The translations under genes and the position numbers were made by a program. Source: Iphione sp. A-MEVVRFRX5 (lineage: Eukaryota). Taken from it: a stretch of 64,000 nucleotides of DNA. The notes beneath the pieces were generated by a model. That model searched no databases, was not told the origin of the DNA, and worked only from the letters and a program-made list of their open reading frames with translations. Numbering within the stretch: position 1 is the stretch's first letter; every line of letters starts with the position of its first letter. This document shows positions 5,647 through 28,070 of the stretch, piece by piece. The stretch covers positions 33,790,001 through 33,854,000 of the forward strand of contig OZ320321.1 of assembly GCA_976226885.1 (NCBI GenBank), written 5' to 3'.

Positions 5647-6362
5647 CTGCAGAATCCAATGAAAAGCAAATATTTTCAATCATTTAAACACACGGTGTTA
5701 CTGGATTTCACACGACAGCTGTATAATGTTGCATCCTTGAGAAGTATTTATTATAGCAAATACCAAATGTTGATGAAGCTTATTTTTAAGTGAATGAGTT
5801 TGGAGCTCATTCGTTTTGAACATAAAATATATCTATATTAAGATAGTTTTGCTTACAGTAGAGACTGCAAATCCTACTGATGAAATAAGCTACAAGGGAT
5901 TGTTAAAGCACGGGAACGCCAGGAGTAAAGGGGCAAGTTATCATGCACCAACAGTGTTTACAGGAGGATTATTATTTAGTAAACTTACTGAAGTATGCTA
6001 TTTTCCATTTTTTCTGTATGTGGGTGTAGTCCCCTTCTTCGAATGCCTACCCAGACAAAACATGGCCTCTCCTCCACTTAGAACTTGGCCTCTCCTCCAC
6101 TTAGAACTACCTTTCTGTGATAACATCTCAAATTAGAGGAAAGCCTTGAGTGTTAGAGCAGTGGACATGAGCATTCTTACCCAGCAAGGCTCCATGGAAC
6201 TGCCTGAGAGGCAAGTGTCCCTTAAGATCCCTTCGAATTGGCTCTGAAATCCCCTTACTGAACTCTGAATTACCTTTTCTGGGTCCTCTGTGCCTACGCC
6301 CTCCCATACCTGCCCTTGTGTTCCTTTACTAGGTTATGAACAGAGATAATATATGAACTTAC

Positions 6363-20849: not shown

Positions 20850-22267
20850 TACTCGAATAAGTGGAAGATAGCCAGGCTAATTCCCATCCCCCCCCCAAGT
20901 GGCACTTACATGATAAAAGAATTTTAGGCTCGTGTCAATCCTACCCGTAATAGGAAAAATGCTGGAATGAATAACCTATGATCAATTGGTAATACTTTTG
21001 GCCTCTAATAATATGTCACCGTATCAGCACGGATTTTGTAAAGGAAAAGGAACGGACACATCAGCTGCCATAGTAATAATGAAAGCCTATAGAGCTATTG
21101 ATTATAAAAATATTTTGGCATGGTATTAGTAGATTTTTTTAAGGCTTTTGACATAGTTAATCATTCAATTTGAACTTATAAGTTAAGTGGGATGGGTTTG
21201 TGTAATCGTCAACTAAATTTTATAAAATCATATCTCACTTAGGTTTCCATATGTCTGCTGTACTGGGGAAAAATCTTGAATGAGAGCGGTAACGAGAGGG
21301 GTCCCCCCAGGAGGTATCCCGGGGCCCCTCTTTTTAGCAATATTAATTAAGGACATTTCAGAGGACATCAAGTTGTCTGAAATTTTCCTATATGCCGACA
21401 ATGTCTCTATTTGTTCAGCTACAAGTAATTTGACTACACTTAGATTGGAATTACAAGGAAGTCTGAAAAACATTTTAAGATGGGCCAATTTGAATGGTCT
21501 AAAGATAAATCGAGAAAAAAACTGTTTATATGAGCATTCGGAAAAAAGGAGGCTTTGATCTAGAAATATATTTTAATGGGAAATAGTTAAAATTGGAAAA
21601 CAGTCCCAAATTGCTTGGCTATAGGCTCGATATGAAGCTGTCGTGGTTACCTTAAATTTTGGACATGAGGAAAATAGCCAGAAGTCGTAATATTATGCTA
21701 TCATAATGCTATTGCATACATTCTCCCATTTAGTACTAGAGGCACTGTGTTTAGAAGTTTCTTTGAACCCATTTTCTATTACGGCCTAGCTTTCATCGTT
21801 GGTTGTACGAAAAAGGCTATGCAGTCATTACAAATAAAATATAATAATGCCCTGAAGCGTGTAATTCTTTATGAAAAATTCAAAAGAGAAGTTTCTGATA
21901 GAAGATTAAGAGATAAACTTTCAATTCTGACTGTAGAAAACCTGGCATTAATACGTAGTGTTATACTAATCCACAGATTACAACAACAAGGATTGTCGGA
22001 AGAGGAAGGTAGAGAAAGGACAAACCGTGGTACCTCAGTTCAGCCAAACCAAATGCAACCAAGAACAACATTGCTGAAAAATAGTTTTTATTTTAAAGGC
22101 ATAGCACATTGGAATAAATTATCTCTTACGTTGAAACAAACAAGGAAGATGAAGGCAAAGAAGCTGATACAAGCCATCATTTGACTTTTAACCTTAAATT
22201 CAAACTTATCACGTTGATACTTCATTGTACTATGAGATGTGGTAATAAAAATCAAATCAAATCAAAT
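20850..22267 (+). mobile_element. Decayed CR1/L2-type LINE (RT to 3' end), 5'-truncated
   Basis: WKIARLIPI, NFRLVSILPVIGKMLE, QHGFCKG, DFFKAFDIVNH, GVPPGGIPGPL, LYADN, SFYFKGIAHWNKL; AATAAA at 22244-22249 followed by an (ATCAA)3 tail. Confidence 0.9.
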
Positions 22268-22542
22268 AGTCTGCCTTTGACCCCTATGGCACCGGAATTC
22301 CCATATACGTGGTCAATATAAGATGAGCTATCATGTGTCGCTGAGCAAGTAAATTAGTTGCCGAGAATAAGTTACAAAACCGCCTTTCCCTCTATTATTT
22401 TAGACGTGGTCGCACTAGGGGTCGGCTAAATTTGCGTGAATTTTGCCGCTTTTCGGCGGAATTTGCACGAGTGATTCAGTCATTCAGCCCAAGTGGATCT
22501 GTTTATGTGCTTTTCGTCTTTATTTCCTGCCTTGTCTGTCTG

Positions 22543-22574
<32 letters not shown>

Positions 22575-22835
22575 CCCTATTCATCAGTTTATGCCCTTTC
22601 AGGCGCTCGAACTCGTTTTCTTTGAACCTCCGAAGCCCTCTAGTGACGGGCCAGTGAACAACTGCATCAAGTGACGTAGGCCTACGACAAGAGAAAAAAA
22701 AACACTCTGTAGAAGTGAGCAGCATCACACAGTGATCCCGCAACGCCCTTCATGCGTGCCAGGAAGAACACCTATCAGGCACATGCTGCAGACAGTCGCC
22801 GAGTAGAGAGGCGTGGAGGCATGTCGTTGTACACA

Positions 22836-23039
22836 CCATCTATTCCCTTAACACCTATGACAATAATAACCATGACACAAGATATCAATAGATACTTTAA
22901 TACAATTTGGATAACACAAAAGGGGGAATACCTTCCCCTTCTGTCCCACCAGCACTGTGAATACTCTCTGGTGGCAAACACTACTTCACACCATGTGACA
23001 GGGCTACTCCTCCTGTCAACTACACATTATCAGCCAAAC
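22836..23039 (-). repeat. Split direct repeat B2 (3' terminus)
   Basis: 204 bp, identical to 23316-23519 except one base (22953 c vs 23433 g). Confidence 0.97.
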
Positions 23040-23180
23040 AAGCAATACAACAGTGTAGGCAAACAATACAACAATACAAACAATACAACAGTATAACCTT
23101 ACTGGGTTGCAGCCTCCATACAACCTCGAGAACTGCACCCTGTGATTATTCTACAATGATTGGCAGGGGTGGGTGGGTGG

Positions 23181-23316
23181 AAACAAGCTGCAGTCGGCGG
23201 CGGCTAACGACAGAGTGGCAGAGACCCCCCACTACAGCAGTAGGGGAGGAATGGGGCCCCCTGGTGTGTTGGACCGTAACTAGATGCCCTGCCACCGCCA
23301 TCTGCAGTACCACACC
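23181..23316 (-). repeat. Split direct repeat A2 (internal)
   Basis: 136 bp, identical to 27325-27460 except one base (23187 g vs 27331 a). Confidence 0.97.
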
Positions 23317-23519
23317 CATCTATTCCCTTAACACCTATGACAATAATAACCATGACACAAGATATCAATAGATACTTTAATACAATTTGGATAACACAAA
23401 AGGGGGAATACCTTCCCCTTCTGTCCCACCAGGACTGTGAATACTCTCTGGTGGCAAACACTACTTCACACCATGTGACAGGGCTACTCCTCCTGTCAAC
23501 TACACATTATCAGCCAAAC
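23316..23519 (-). repeat. Split direct repeat B1 (internal, abutting A2)
   Basis: Copy of B2; begins 11 bp after the corrected YR stop codon. Confidence 0.97.
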
Positions 23520-23529
23520 CCTGCCCCTT

Positions 23530-24490
23530 TTACACCTGGTCAGAGGCGCTTTCGAAGACCAGGGCTGCTCTTTTGGCAGCTAGTGTGTTACTCGTATATA
23601 CCATATATGCGGGATCCAACCGCCACGTGCCCAGACTCTTTATCTCATCCTTGTTCGCCCCTAACTCCTGTAGGGTAGAGGCCCCCCCCCCTACGTAAGC
23701 TGTGGAGGGAATACTGCTTATAATTTAGTCCCATATCATGCAGTGCCAGACTGAATATCCTTGCCACACTAGACGTACGAAGTGGATCACCTAGGACTGG
23801 ATCACAAAATAAAGGCTGTACTGCACTAACTGTTGGGACACAGCGGATCATGGATTTCAGGGCTCTAACCGGGCACATTTCATGATCAGACACACATGGT
23901 ATAAATATCTTACATGGATCATTCTTGTTTATCGTCTTTGACCATTTGATCATTACCTCGGCACCATCCTTCTTGTACTTAACATCACCACGTGTAAGCT
24001 GCCTCGATGGGCAATAGGTGCCTGTCTTTGCTAGTACATTCGATTGCCTTACAAGCGAGTAGTACATAAATAAAAATAATGCTTTTAGGACTGGGGCTAA
24101 TGGTCCAATACCACTTAGATACTGTACCAACATTCTCATATTGTCGTACGTGACTGGTAACTTCCTGTCGATTACATGTTTGCTCGACTTCTCAATGGCT
24201 TTTAATGAGTTGATTACAGGTTTAGCATCATAAACACTCCTGTCCAGACCAGCGGCATCCAGGACCTGCCTCAAGGCAGTAATGTGCTGCGAGGTGACCT
24301 TAGGTGAATAATACATGTTGTGGTACTCTATGTACGTAAGCACATCATGCAGGCCTGGCTCATGCCACTCAATACCATATTTTTCGGAGTATCCGATGAA
24401 AAGTCTGACCATTCGATGCCTTGCTTTGATGGTGTCCTTGGTGACGGCCTGTAGTTGTCTGTGAGCCGCTCGCTTCACCAGTGGTTCCAA
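23530..24490 (-). CDS. Tyrosine recombinase (one +1 frameshift in G10 run at 23682-23691)
   Basis: N-terminal SAM-like integrase region, YSLVRQSN (catalytic R), IKWSKT (K), HSLRR (HxxR). Deleting one G gives RRGGASTLQELGANKDEIKSLGTWRLDPAYMVY (W and nucleophile Y) and a TAA at 23530-23532; 319 aa counted from the TTG at 24490. Confidence 0.95.
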
Positions 24491-24504
24491 GCGCTGGTCT
24501 GTAA

Positions 24505-26330
24505 TCAGAATTCGCCAACCATTACTAGCAGCTCTTCAGACGGGAATACTCTCACCATGTCAGGATGCTTACTTAAATACGAATGTACTATGGCCTTAAA
24601 TTTCGGACTCTTCGCATATCTTGACATGGCGTCTGCTATCATCATGCTTGTACCTGGGATATGTGTGTACACAAAATCGACGCCGTATTTGGCCTGGGTA
24701 AACCACACTGCCCTTGCTGCGGACAACATTCTGCTGTCCCTTCCCCTGCCTGTCTTGAATACATGAATTGAAGAAAGGTTATCACAGAAAACATTATACG
24801 ACCTTGACTTCGAGCCTGGAATGAATACCCCAGCAGCTACTGCTACGTTGAATGCTTCGATTTGAGATATGTGGGCCGTACGAAGGAACCTGGGGGGTAG
24901 GCACCATGTAGTACTGCTCTCTCGTGTATGCACCCATTCCATCAATGCATGCGTCACAATAGATATGACCATCAGGACTCCCCTTAGGGAACAAGGACAC
25001 GCCATTATATGACGCGAGGAATTTAATAAACCACTCAAAATCAGCCTTGACATATGCATTGATCTCTACAGCTTTCTTATTGTCGGCCTGGGCTGCCCTA
25101 TACTCACAGAGAACCCTACCCAAAAATAGGCTGGCAATTGGGACACACCGGGATATGTGGTTAACTAACCCCATGAAGCGTTGACACTCTTTAACCGTAA
25201 TACTGCTTTTATGAAGGGCATCCTTACACTGTGTCACTGCTTTTTCTATCTTCTCTTGGGGAATGGATAGTGTCTGCTTTTCTAAGTCTACAGTGATGCC
25301 AAGCCAAGTTAGCCTCTTGGTGGGAGGGAAACACTTATGTGATGCAACCATCAGCCCAAGGCCTTGTGCGTATTCAATTGTGTGTGAGTATGCATATGTA
25401 GCTATGTGTGGTGGCGATACAAACACGTAGTCATCCAAATACGGCAAACCTGAAACACAGGGTATGTCAGACACAATCTTATCAACAATATGTTCAGAAA
25501 TAACCTGCATATAGAGAGAACTTAGTCTAGTGCCAAACGGAAGGCGTTTATCGAAGAAGTACTGTCCTTCGTATTTGATACCTAATAGTGGCCAGTCCAG
25601 GGGGGTCTGTAAGAAAGTTCCTGTAGGCTCGCTTCAAGTCTATCAACCATAACAGAACTGGTTCAAGAAAGGCATTAATAACATTGACAAGATCAAATGT
25701 GGTAGGCAATTTGAGTTTGTAAAAAATGTCAAAAAATATGTGTGGTGGAATCTGTTCATTCACACCACTGTATGCCATGTCTATGATTATGCGATGTCGA
25801 TCCTCTGAAGACTTGGGTTGAGTCGTGATGGGACTCACGACCATTGAATCAAACGGGGGGGATGCATATGGACCAGACAACGCGTCCAGCCCCAACTCCT
25901 CCTGGATGTAACTGCTGACGTGTCGACGAACACTTTGCTGGATGGGGTAATTGGGTCTTGTTGCAGCAGGCAAGCTTGGCGCCACGTAGCCCAGAGGAAA
26001 GCCAAATTTGATGCCCCCCAAGAAGAAGGCATCGTTTGGCGAGGTTGAAGGAAAAATGTGACGCCATCTGCTGTGTTCGAGCGACGACTGTAATGGAATC
26101 CTAGACTCCAGCATGTTTGGTCTGCCGGAGGCTCGTACTATGCGATAGTACAGAAGATCTGGTGACTCAAGGCTCGCCACTGGCCATGCCAGTAGCCTGG
26201 CAACAGTGACCTGGTCGAAGTAAGGCAGCTCATGTGTTAGAAATTGGTTACCTTGAAATGGGGTGTACTCAGTTGATTCATACGTCACCTCATGACAGTC
26301 AGGTTTGGTGAGCAGATGTCGGGTTACCAC
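24505..26330 (-). CDS. Reverse transcriptase - RNase H polyprotein (two +1 frameshifts in G6 runs at 25600-25605 and 24892-24897)
   Basis: IDLKRAYRN, corrected DPLDWPLLGIKYEGQYFFDKRLPFG, YLDD, LTWLGI; RNase H CDAC..G, corrected PTPRFLRTAHISQIE, CDN, ADAMSR. Removing the two bases gives one frame of 607 aa from the GTG at 26330. Confidence 0.95.
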
Positions 26331-27280
26331 TCGTAATCTCGCTTGGGCCTCTGCGTCTGCTCTGCGCTCTGCCCTGATGGCTTTATCTCGGAGGGCTTGG
26401 TCTTCTTCTTAATTCGACAGGCGTCAATTCGATGATCGAACATCTTGTTCAACATATAATAACAGATTGGACATGAATGAATCATCCTATACTTGTCAGC
26501 AACATGATAGTTTGGGAGCGTACACTTCCCGGATGCCCATGAGGGACATATTGCGATACTATCCCTAGCAATCTTCTGCTGCGACATCATACTATTGTTA
26601 TGCATAAAGGCATTGATCGATCTTGACTTCTGCTGTTGGATCTTACTGTTCTCTGTGAGCTTAAGACGTCCCAGATTGATAGCCTCCCACATCTCGCCCA
26701 CCCACTCCCTCAAGGGGGGCAAGGGAATGGATCGGGCTTCGTCCACCAGATCTATCAGGTGATCGAGGAGGGCCGGTTTTGATATACTACTGGGGCATTT
26801 CGAGTCGTTGAACATATATAAGATGCCCAGGATGTATTGGAATATGTTTAGCTTAGACAGATCTGGTTTCTCAGTGTCGCTCTGATACACGTAGGTAGCA
26901 GGTGTAAAACGTCTTGGTTTACCTTTAACCTGTAAGCTGTCTGGGTATAATGCAGAGAAGAATTCCCCTGACCTTCCCTCACCTAGTCGCCTCAATTCTC
27001 CAGGTGGAGGGAATTCCTCTGCAACGGAGTATATCTCGTCGTCATCTGCCTCGTCATCGTTGCTGCCGGTGGCACCGGCCGCTTCGGTCACGGGTGGGTG
27101 GTCACCGGTCTGGCTGGTGGACTGACCGCTCAGCCCTGACTTCGACCTGGTGACCATACCAGTCTTGCCCTTTTCGCTGATATCGAGACGGGATTCGATG
27201 TTTTTCATTCGTTGTGTCATCTCCTGTATGGCCTTCTGTATGTCTTGTAGAGAGCCTTTCTCCTGGCCCGACTTCGACAT
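26324..27280 (-). CDS. Gag-like ORF1 of the YR retrotransposon, 318 aa
   Basis: Intact ATG-to-TAA ORF 45 bp inside A1, with an N-terminal coiled-coil-like stretch and a C-terminal Cys/His cluster (CPSWASGKC..H..HSCPIC..H..C) of the type seen in DIRS/Ngaro gag. Confidence 0.88.
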   Translation of the reverse strand: MSKSGQEKGSLQDIQKAIQEMTQRMKNIESRLDISEKGKTGMVTRSKSGLSGQSTSQTGDHPPVTEAAGATGSNDDEADDDEIYSVAEEFPPPGELRRLGEGRSGEFFSALYPDSLQVKGKPRRFTPATYVYQSDTEKPDLSKLNIFQYILGILYMFNDSKCPSSISKPALLDHLIDLVDEARSIPLPPLREWVGEMWEAINLGRLKLTENSKIQQQKSRSINAFMHNNSMMSQQKIARDSIAICPSWASGKCTLPNYHVADKYRMIHSCPICYYMLNKMFDHRIDACRIKKKTKPSEIKPSGQSAEQTQRPKRDYEW

Positions 27281-27324
27281 ATTTCGGTCAGCTATCGGTC
27301 AAGGTACTAGCGGTCACAACGGTC

Positions 27325-27460
27325 AAACAAACTGCAGTCGGCGGCGGCTAACGACAGAGTGGCAGAGACCCCCCACTACAGCAGTAGGGGAGGAATGGGG
27401 CCCCCTGGTGTGTTGGACCGTAACTAGATGCCCTGCCACCGCCATCTGCAGTACCACACC
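27325..27460 (-). repeat. Split direct repeat A1 (5' terminus)
   Basis: Copy of A2, offset 4144 bp. Confidence 0.97.
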
Positions 27461-27809
27461 AACCTCCGGAAGATGTAGCACTGGTAAAAACAGTCGACGG
27501 GGCCGCGTACCCGGACCAGTTGTCCCTCAGTTTTGGAGCCGACCTTGTGCTTCTCCCTATGGTTCTCAGCTTAACCCATTTTGTTAGTCACAAGCGCCTT
27601 TGGCGCCTGCACTAGAGTGTTTGTGGTTGGAGGGGGGGGGTGTTAAAGTCCAGACTGCTTTACAACCCTTGGTTCTGCTTAACTGCACATAGAGGTGTAG
27701 TGATACACATAACTGAGAAAATAGTGGCAGAGTTTTGTTCTGGTTTCTTTTATATTCTGCTTTCTACCTTAAAACATATTTTAGTATCTATTATTCTTAA
27801 AAAGATAAA

Positions 27810-28070
27810 CAAAACAATGTAAGAGAAAAGAACTTAAGAGGTTTAGGAAGACTCTCACACTAATGAAACCTCCCTCCATAGCCGGACTACTTTCAGGCAA
27901 CGTTTTATATAGGTAGTGTAACAAGGTTATAACCAGTGGGATGCCCGATGTCTATTATGCAGCAAAAATTCAACATTTGAAAGGTCTCTATTTGTATTCG
28001 TTTCATTTGGTCTTTTTTTTTTTTTACTAATTACTAAGTGGAACTCAATCACTTTGATGGTGGCAGGACC
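27810..28070. repeat. Dispersed repeat, diverged copy also at about 37716-37900
   Basis: atgaaacctccctccatagccggactactttcaggcaacgttttatataggtagtgtaa vs atgagacctcctccccatggctgtactactttcaggcaatgttgtatagaggtagtgtaa, with flanking similarity. Confidence 0.75.

What the first reader, a model, noticed from the sequence alone, without database searches (positions are those of the whole stretch)
22832..27460. Complete, very recent RT + tyrosine recombinase element with A1...B1A2-spacer-B2 split direct repeats
Seen: 4.63-kb unit with gag, RT/RNaseH and YR, all catalytic motifs present, and A (136 bp) and B (204 bp) repeats each differing by one base. No methyltransferase or extra ORF, and a 141-bp unique spacer between A2 and B2. 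Known: DIRS-order elements (Ngaro, PAT) use split direct repeats to regenerate a circular DNA intermediate that is integrated by the YR rather than a DDE integrase. Inference: a minimal, probably still mobile and possibly undescribed family; a self-contained RNA-to-circle-to-site-specific-integration system of potential biotechnological interest.
Basis: partly seen in the sequence, partly recalled or inferred. Interest (0 to 1): 0.8.

Follow-up and report, generated by a model that had tools for sequence, protein, structure and literature searches.

The report
Young but broken Ngaro retrotransposon copy
This is a recently inserted, full-length copy of an ordinary Ngaro-type jumping gene (reverse transcriptase plus tyrosine recombinase).

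Summary
The repeat layout is real. On the minus strand (27460-22836) the order is A1, gag, RT/RNase H, tyrosine recombinase, B1A2, a 141-bp spacer, B2. A (136 bp) and B (204 bp) each differ by one base between their two copies.

The element is not "complete". The RT, the RNase H and the recombinase are each thrown out of frame at a homopolymer run, and the recombinase loses its catalytic tyrosine. The only close relative (chromosome 22, about 90% identical) is also broken, once at the same G run.

The layout is the textbook Ngaro superfamily: no methyltransferase, split direct repeats downstream of the recombinase. The spacer is not special. All sibling families in this genome have one, and so does an unrelated Ngaro from another assembly. 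Integration is only loosely sequence-directed.

The lineage was active until recently: dN/dS between the two copies is 0.06-0.13, repeat divergence is 0.6%, and a solo A-spacer-B remnant exists. Several sibling-family copies keep all frames open. The scan has already noted Ngaro and DIRS elements elsewhere in this genome.

The one new observation is that repeat A is a strongly conserved, covariation-supported folded domain, and repeat B carries a conserved poly(A) module. No reads or RNA runs were listed, so assembly error at the breaks is unlikely but not excluded.

The parts
27325..27460 (-). Repeat A1 (136 bp), the 5' end of the element. It is a folded domain: Stem I pairs 27451-27435 with 27348-27332, and Stem II pairs 27432-27423 with 27409-27399.
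   Evidence: 1 mismatch to A2; covarying Stem I; coordinates.
26324..27280 (-). ORF1, gag-like, 318 codons, open, with a Cys/His-rich C-terminus.
   Evidence: dN/dS is 0.07 against the chromosome-22 copy. No Pfam family and no homologues in the large protein set.
25606..26330 (-). pol piece 1: N-terminal part and RT motif A, in the -1 frame relative to gag. This frame is open 26 codons upstream of the gag stop.
25600..25605 (-). Frame break 1, at a run of six C inside the RT.
24898..25599 (-). pol piece 2: RT motifs B-E (YLDD at 25441-25430), thumb/connection, and the first RNase H Asp.
   Evidence: The contiguous homologue in L002 hits Pfam RVT_1 at 1.8e-7.
24892..24897 (-). Frame break 2, at a run of six C inside RNase H.
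24505..24891 (-). pol piece 3: the rest of RNase H (Glu, Asp, His...Asp) up to the pol stop.
   Evidence: The RNase H fold was confirmed on the L002 homologue.
23692..24535 (-). Tyrosine recombinase piece 1, in the -1 frame relative to pol, with no ATG. It contains Arg I, the WSKT lysine and HSLRRGG.
   Evidence: A family profile matches Cre and Pfam PF00589.
23682..23691 (-). Frame break 3, at a run of ten G. The same run is two bases shorter, and also out of frame, in the chromosome-22 copy.
23533..23681 (-). Recombinase C-terminal piece in another frame (GTW...AYMVY...stop). It carries the nucleophilic tyrosine.
23316..23519 (-). Repeat B1 (204 bp), with a GC hairpin at 23418-23403 and ATTAAA at 23381-23376.
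23181..23316 (-). Repeat A2 (136 bp). B1|A2 is the internal copy of the circle junction.
23040..23180 (-). Spacer (141 bp). It starts with a C-rich tract at 23180-23166, followed by a TGTA-rich short tandem repeat.
   Evidence: Homologous spacers in relatives.
22836..23039 (-). Repeat B2 (204 bp), the 3' end of the element, with a hairpin at 22938-22923 and ATTAAA at 22901-22896.

Best explanation
The stretch is a structurally full-length copy (4,625 bp, minus strand) of an Ngaro-superfamily tyrosine-recombinase retrotransposon. It inserted recently, and as assembled it can no longer make its own RT/RNase H or recombinase. How the family works is inferred from the anatomy and from published models for this order. 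A genomic RNA starts in A1 and ends at the poly(A) site inside B2, so it lacks the outermost part of each end. gag, pol and the recombinase lie in successive -1 frames. The RT/RNase H makes cDNA. The missing ends are restored from the internal B1|A2 copy of the junction. The result is a closed (or closable) molecule carrying a B|A junction. The Cre-like recombinase then exchanges that junction with a genomic site that loosely resembles it, without a target-site duplication. Repeat A is a folded sense-strand domain, probably a cis signal for the element's own proteins. Repeat B is the 3'-end-formation module. This particular copy either decayed after insertion or was copied in trans from an already defective RNA.
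For: Shown: the layout A1-gag-pol-YR-B1A2-spacer-B2 with near-identical repeats. RT: Pfam RVT_1 on the contiguous homologues. RNase H: invariant D-E-D-D residues, and a model with pLDDT 85 that matches Ty3 RT, RNase H1 and HIV RT. Recombinase: R/K/HxxR/W/Y motifs, a profile match to Cre at 1.6e-4, and PF00589 in 7 of 8 members. No methyltransferase. No inverted repeats. Three frame breaks. The sister copy L002 has the same layout, repeats with 1+1 mismatches, and two breaks. dN/dS is 0.06-0.13 with dS about 0.4 between the two copies, so the lineage evolved as a working element. A solo A-spacer-B remnant exists. Six sibling copies have all frames open over 3.7 kb with 34 unbroken runs of 6 or more bases. 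In W, 3 of 8 such runs sit at breaks. The junctions of 13 insertions show a left flank resembling the B end, a G/T-rich right flank and no duplication. ATTAAA or AATAAA lies 45-62 nt before the end of B in all families examined, including a foreign one. Stem I of A is 95% paired with 5 compensated pairs, against 30-59% pairing in slid controls, and it holds in more than 15 families. Published definitions and models: PMC4157794, PMC9210276, PMC8547959, PMC7192593.
Against: No reads or RNA runs were listed. The frame breaks therefore cannot be checked against raw data, and transcript ends, circles and activity were not observed. All three breaks lie in homopolymers, which is also where assemblies err. 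The start of transcription is unknown. No canonical slippery heptamer was found in the gag/pol overlap, so how pol and the recombinase are translated is unresolved. RT and YR trees against named Ngaro, PAT, DIRS and VIPER references could not be built.
Confidence: 0.8

Rival explanations
1. The copy is intact and potentially autonomous, and the three frame breaks are homopolymer-length errors of the assembly.
For: All three breaks sit in homopolymer runs (C6, C6, G10). There are no in-frame stop codons inside the pieces. The terminal repeats are 99.4% identical. The G run is also mis-framed in the sister copy, by a different length, as expected for a run that is hard to size.
Against: Six sibling copies in the same assembly have all three frames open across 34 runs of 6-7 bases, so such errors are rare here. 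Three errors in one 3.7-kb stretch would be unusual. The two C runs are absent from the sister copy, which reads through in frame there. The A and B repeat pairs, which contain G5-G6 and C5 runs, show no length differences. The repeat divergence predicts roughly a dozen changes in the element since insertion, so a few slippage indels are expected.
Confidence: 0.15
2. The breaks, or some of them, were already present in the RNA that was copied. In that case this is a non-autonomous passenger mobilised in trans by proteins of an intact relative.
For: Both full copies of the family are defective, yet both have young repeats. The lineage shows strong purifying selection overall. Intact-looking sibling families with the same conserved A domain exist and could supply proteins.
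Against: The two copies share no break of identical form. The nearest families are only 65-72% identical, so cross-mobilisation is not assured. Decay after insertion is sufficient to explain the data.
Confidence: 0.2
3. It represents a new superfamily or new architecture of YR retrotransposon, defined by the A2-spacer-B2 arrangement and the lack of any accessory ORF.
For: Published cartoons write B1A2B2 without a spacer (PMC8547959, PMC9210276). The best protein matches in a 5.8-billion-protein set are only 35-36% identical, and gag has none.
Against: Every defining Ngaro feature that could be tested is met. The spacer occurs in all sibling families examined and in an unrelated Ngaro, L044. 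The accessory hydrolase ORF is described only for some Ngaro lineages (PMC9210276, PMC7192593). Low identity to a mostly prokaryotic and metagenomic protein set says little.
Confidence: 0.03

Closest known systems
Ngaro superfamily of tyrosine-recombinase retrotransposons (Goodwin and Poulter 2004, as summarised in PMC4157794, PMC9210276 and PMC8547959)
   Same: The gene order is gag, RT/RNase H, YR. There is no methyltransferase. The split direct repeats are A1-[ORFs]-B1A2B2, with the internal repeats downstream of the YR. The ORFs overlap and there are no target-site duplications. Solo AB-type remnants occur, as reported for Cafeteria Ngaros. The superfamily is common in invertebrates.
   Different: It has no SGNH-hydrolase ORF, which is present in amphibian and some other Ngaros. 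A 57-171 bp spacer between A2 and B2 is not drawn in the published schemes, but it is shared by all relatives examined here. Membership by RT/YR phylogeny was not tested.
PAT-like elements (DIRS group)
   Same: Split direct repeats, a YR and RT/RNase H.
   Different: PAT elements carry a methyltransferase domain and place the internal repeats differently. No such domain is present here.
DIRS-1 of Dictyostelium and DIRS1-like elements
   Same: The same logic applies: an internal copy of the circle junction restores the ends lost in the transcript. In DIRS-1 that copy is the ICR, shown experimentally to be essential (PMC7192593). Both use YR-mediated integration.
   Different: DIRS1-like elements have inverted terminal repeats, an ICR and a methyltransferase. 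This element has direct repeats, no inverted repeats and no methyltransferase.
Cre recombinase of phage P1 (structural relative of the YR)
   Same: A family profile matches both the N-terminal and the catalytic parts of Cre. The R-K-H-R-W-Y catalytic set is conserved in intact relatives.
   Different: Cre acts on a defined 34-bp site. The insertions here share only a few bases around the junction.
R-U5 / poly(A) organisation of LTR retrotransposon ends
   Same: Repeat B holds a poly(A) signal well inside the repeat, so the RNA should end before the repeat does and the missing part must be recopied.
   Different: There are no LTRs, no tRNA primer-binding site was recognised, and there is no DDE integrase.

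Membership tests
Ngaro | Encodes a tyrosine recombinase | tested here: met
   R/K/HxxR/W/Y motifs in the alignment; profile match to Cre at 1.6e-4; PF00589 in 7 of 8 members. In this copy the gene is frame-broken before the Tyr.
Ngaro | RT and RNase H in ORF2 | tested here: met
   RVT_1 at 1.8e-7 on the L002 piece and 5e-11 to 3e-9 on siblings. The RNase H fold model matches Ty3 RT, RNase H1 and HIV RT. Two frame breaks in this copy.
Ngaro | gag-like ORF1 upstream of pol | tested here: met
   A 318-codon open frame with a Cys/His motif, under purifying selection. No family or homologue found.
Ngaro | No methyltransferase domain | tested here: met
   No such Pfam hit in this copy, its sister or intact siblings. 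The pol stop at 24505 lies 30 bases downstream of where the YR frame opens (24535), so the two frames overlap.
Ngaro | Split direct repeats A1-[ORFs]-B1A2B2, with the internal repeats downstream of the YR | tested here: met
   The same holds in L002, L004-L009 and L044.
Ngaro | RT/YR sequences cluster with reference Ngaro elements | not testable with these tools
   No named reference sequences (Repbase/Dfam) are available. The nearest database proteins are unnamed and 35-36% identical, and one of them lies in an element with the same layout.
DIRS1-like | Inverted terminal repeats plus an internal complementary region, and a methyltransferase | tested here: not met
   0 inverted repeat pairs; no methyltransferase.
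PAT-like | Methyltransferase domain together with split direct repeats | tested here: not met
   Split direct repeats are present but there is no methyltransferase.
HDV-like self-cleaving ribozyme (considered for repeat A) | Nested double pseudoknot in which the first bases of the RNA (P1) pair downstream of P3 | tested here: not met
   The order of the strands looked compatible. However, the P1 candidate is 78% paired with no compensated change, and variation breaks it. No P3 was found. Rfam gave no ribozyme match at E up to 10.

The most novel reading that the evidence does not exclude
Repeat A of this clade of Ngaro elements is not just a repeat. It is a discrete folded sense-strand RNA (or single-stranded cDNA) domain whose closing helix spans almost the whole repeat. 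It is kept 98-99% identical between lineages whose coding regions have dS of about 0.4. Together with the poly(A) module in B and the C-rich/TGTA-rich spacer, it would be an undescribed set of cis-acting replication signals. Candidate roles are packaging, RT recruitment or priming, or definition of the 5' end. Such signals would make the poorly understood replication cycle of YR retrotransposons experimentally approachable.
Probability: 0.35. Interest if true: 0.55.

Novelty: new member of a known kind. Interest (0 to 1): 0.33.

Why it matters
As a single locus it matters little. It is one defective copy of a known kind of element, in a genome that holds about thirty full-length relatives of the same clade. 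It is not a ready-made "RNA-to-circle-to-site-specific-integration" tool, because the recombinase gene is broken and the family's target choice is loose.

The comparison it prompted has some value. It gives a clean catalogue of what is conserved in the non-coding ends of a young Ngaro clade: a covarying folded A domain, a poly(A) module inside B, a spacer with a conserved C-rich start, and junction-like target sites. The replication of Ngaro elements has never been studied experimentally, so these are concrete, testable handles.

Tried and rejected
1. Reads and RNA. The look-up of sequencing runs listed no run. Neither the frame breaks nor expression could be checked.

2. Empty site for this insertion. 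The right flank is single-copy. The left flank holds a repeat of about 270 bp that ends more than 110 bp from the junction, so no paralogous empty site exists. For L002, a neighbouring satellite unit gives an approximate empty site.

3. HDV-like ribozyme in A. Rejected. Hammerhead and twister cores were looked for by eye and not found.

4. tRNA primer-binding site at the TGGTACTGC start of A. Only 9 bases are conserved, so this was not pursued.

5. Canonical -1 slippery heptamer in the gag/pol overlap. None is in phase in this copy or in five relatives.

6. Pfam on the broken pieces of this copy gave nothing. The contiguous relatives were needed.

7. gag. No Pfam family, no atlas family and no homologue was found.

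8. Metagenome scan with the A signature. It gave 119 matches, none with the extended signature, so they are chance hits.

9. A family sharing a similar Stem I sequence (GCAGAGGGCAGTGGC) was suspected to be a closer relative. Its coding regions are only 64-69% identical.

10. The Foldseek and PDB sequence search with a single YR gave nothing useful. The profile search did.

11. An RT/YR phylogeny with named references was not done because no reference sequences are available through the tools.
Full report
**Observation**

The element lies on the minus strand, from 27460 down to 22836 (4,625 bp).
- A1 27460-27325 and A2 23316-23181: 136 bp, one mismatch.
- B1 23519-23316 and B2 23039-22836: 204 bp, one mismatch.
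- A 141-bp spacer, 23180-23040, between A2 and B2.
- No inverted repeats.

Between A1 and B1 lie a 318-codon gag-like ORF, a pol region and a recombinase gene.

The word "complete" does not hold. Translation in all three frames and alignment to the sister copy show that pol is split into three frames and the recombinase into two. The frame changes at three places:
- A run of six C at 25605-25600, between RT motifs A and B.
- A run of six C at 24897-24892, between the first Asp and the Glu of RNase H.
- A run of ten G at 23691-23682, directly after HSLRRGG.

After the third break, the Trp and the nucleophilic Tyr of the recombinase are encoded in another frame. All catalytic motifs can be read in the DNA, but not in one frame.

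**What the proteins are**

Pfam found nothing on the broken pieces. The contiguous homologues gave clear results:
- RT: RVT_1 above its gathering score.
- RNase H: the region has invariant D-E-D-D residues. An AlphaFold model of the sister copy's piece (pLDDT 85) matches Ty3 RT, archaeal and human RNase H1 and the HIV RT RNase H domain.
- Recombinase: an alignment of eight recombinases shows the R, K, HxxR, W and Y set. Its profile matches Cre at 1.6e-4 in both halves, and PF00589 is found in seven of eight members.
- No methyltransferase or other accessory domain is detected. There is no room for one either, because the pol stop (24505) lies 30 bases downstream of where the recombinase frame opens (24535).
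- gag has no family and no detectable homologue.

**Relatives and age**

A search of the whole assembly (1.18 Gb) finds one close full-length relative on contig 22 (L002). It is 89.8% identical over aligned bases and has the same layout. Its own repeats differ by 1+1 bases. It has two frame breaks: one private, and one at the same G run, which is two bases shorter there and also out of frame.

A solo A-spacer-B remnant of a third lineage lies on contig 11.

Between the two full copies dN/dS is 0.06-0.13 in gag, pol and the recombinase, with dS about 0.4. One segment that I first read in the wrong frame gave a dN/dS of 9. The two copies therefore descend from a lineage that evolved for a long time as a working element. 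Each inserted recently (0.6% repeat divergence).

An absolute age cannot be given without a mutation rate. The divergence implies roughly a dozen changes in the element since insertion, so a few slippage indels are expected.

**Are the breaks real?**

No sequencing run was listed, so this cannot be settled here. Two kinds of evidence point to real mutations.

First, six copies of sibling families in the same assembly have all three frames open over about 3.7 kb. They contain 34 homopolymer runs of 6-7 bases that do not break the frame. In this copy, three of eight such runs coincide with breaks.

Second, the A and B repeat pairs show no length differences, although they contain G5-G6 and C5 runs.

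I put about 0.15 on assembly error for all three breaks. The G10 run is the most suspect.

**Family assignment**

The published definition of Ngaro is: no methyltransferase, and split direct repeats A1-[ORFs]-B1A2B2 with the internal repeats downstream of the recombinase (PMC4157794, PMC9210276, PMC8547959). Every testable point of that definition is met.

DIRS1-like elements (inverted repeats, ICR, methyltransferase) and PAT-like elements (methyltransferase) fail on tested features.

The hydrolase ORF is an optional feature of some Ngaro lineages (PMC9210276, PMC7192593), so its absence is unremarkable.

The spacer is not a peculiarity either:
- L002 has 158 bp.
- The solo remnant has 171 bp.
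- Sibling families have 76-117 bp.
- A 35%-identical Ngaro in a foreign assembly (L044, found through the best RT homologue) has 57 bp.

A signature of repeat A occurs 75 times in this genome against 0 for the reversed control. About thirty of these are pairs 4.1 kb apart, meaning full-length elements of at least ten families. The scan's earlier notes also record Ngaro and DIRS elements elsewhere in this genome.

**Non-coding anatomy and inferred mechanism**

*Repeat A.* Four observations bear on it.
- It is 133-135 of 136 bases identical among the three lineages, although B is 84-88% identical, the spacer 70-80%, and synonymous sites have diverged by about 0.4.
- Its first 40-65 bases are recognisable in families that are only 65-72% identical overall.
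- In all 21 aligned sequences, bases 10-25 pair with a stretch ending 5-10 bases before the 3' end of A. This Stem I is 95% paired, five pairs have compensatory changes, and slid controls give 30-59% pairing. Further families add more compensated variants.
- Frequent G-U pairs on the sense strand argue for sense RNA or sense-strand single-stranded DNA. A second helix joins two invariant motifs, and a variable hairpin follows.

I tested an HDV-like ribozyme fold, which would have cut exactly at the element's 5' end. It fails: variation breaks the P1 candidate and Rfam reports nothing.

*Repeat B.* In all families, including the foreign one, B carries a GC hairpin followed by ATTAAA or AATAAA 45-62 bases before its end, and then G/T-rich sequence. 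This looks like a complete poly(A) module. The RNA would then end inside B, and the last part of B2 would have to be recopied from B1. That is the rationale of split repeats, and of the DIRS-1 ICR, which has been shown to be essential (PMC7192593).

*Spacer.* It always begins with a C-rich CCACCC-type tract and is enriched in TGTA. Its role is unknown. One low-confidence idea is that it acts as an upstream enhancer favouring 3'-end formation at B2 over B1.

*Coding frames.* pol is in the -1 frame relative to gag, and the recombinase is -1 relative to pol and lacks an ATG. No canonical slippery heptamer is in phase in the gag/pol overlap. In most relatives an ATG overlaps the gag stop; here it reads GTG.

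**Integration**

In this copy GGTGTG occurs at the start of A1, at B1|A2 and across the B2/flank boundary, as a parallel note of the scan says. I confirmed this here, and 5 of 6 bases hold in L002.

Across thirteen insertions of the clade the pattern is looser:
- The bases left of A1 resemble the end of B (mostly R-A-T followed by A or T).
- The bases right of B2 are merely G/T-rich.
- In two copies the last bases of B2 are replaced by flank-like bases.
- There is no duplication.

This fits recombinase-mediated exchange between a B|A junction and loosely similar genomic sites. It does not fit site-specific integration in any useful sense.

**Verdict**

It is a new member of a known kind, and interest is low to moderate. 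The part worth keeping is the conserved folded A domain and the B poly(A) module. I found no description of either in the searchable literature, and both can be tested with ordinary RNA experiments.

Noticed in passing
window 27460-27325 and 23316-23181 (minus strand); also L002-L030 and L045-L059: Repeat A is a conserved folded domain. It is 98-99% identical among three lineages whose ORFs have dS of about 0.4. A closing helix (nt 10-25 with nt about 113-128) shows compensatory changes in more than 15 families, and an invariant second helix is present. There is no Rfam match, and an HDV-like fold was rejected.
   Followed up: yes
window 23418-23376 and 22938-22896 (minus strand); B repeats of L002, L004, L005, L009, L044: Repeat B carries a GC hairpin and then ATTAAA (AATAAA in L044) 45-62 nt before its 3' end, followed by G/T-rich sequence. 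This looks like a complete poly(A) module inside the repeat.
   Followed up: partly
window 23180-23040 (minus strand); spacers of L002, L004-L009, L012, L044: The spacer after A2 always starts with a C-rich CCACCC-type tract (G-rich on the opposite strand), even in a 35%-identical foreign Ngaro. It is enriched in TGTA: 6 observed against 0.8 expected in this copy.
   Followed up: partly
L012 = G000:C11:101865581-101866098: A solo A-spacer-B remnant of a third lineage of this family (A 98%, B 88%, spacer 70% identical). It is the Ngaro counterpart of a solo LTR.
   Followed up: partly
L002:1432-1505 and 6265-6338: The chromosome-22 copy sits in a GT-rich satellite-like array. A neighbouring unit reads straight across the insertion point and serves as an approximate empty site containing GGTGTT.
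   Followed up: partly
window 26408-26324 (minus strand); the same region in L002, L004, L005, L007, L009: The -1 frame upstream of the gag stop encodes a peptide conserved across families (…ALRD.A.RAERRADAEAQ…), but there is no canonical slippery heptamer. An ATG overlapping the gag stop in most families is GTG in this copy, through a change that is silent in gag.
   Followed up: partly
window 24535-24490 (minus strand): The recombinase frame is -1 relative to pol, opens 45 nt before the listed start and has no ATG. The same holds in intact relatives, so how the recombinase is translated is unexplained.
   Followed up: no
window about 27590-27860: A repeat of about 270 bp (SINE-like in size) with more than 1,200 first-look candidates in the genome and copies 76-96% identical. 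It ends about 110-125 bp from the Ngaro insertion.
   Followed up: no
window 21280-22184 (+ strand): Fragmented ORFs that look like the C-terminal part of a non-LTR retrotransposon reverse transcriptase, read by eye and not searched, lying just beyond the Ngaro's 3' end. A (TGTC)n microsatellite at 22533-22574 lies between them.
   Followed up: no
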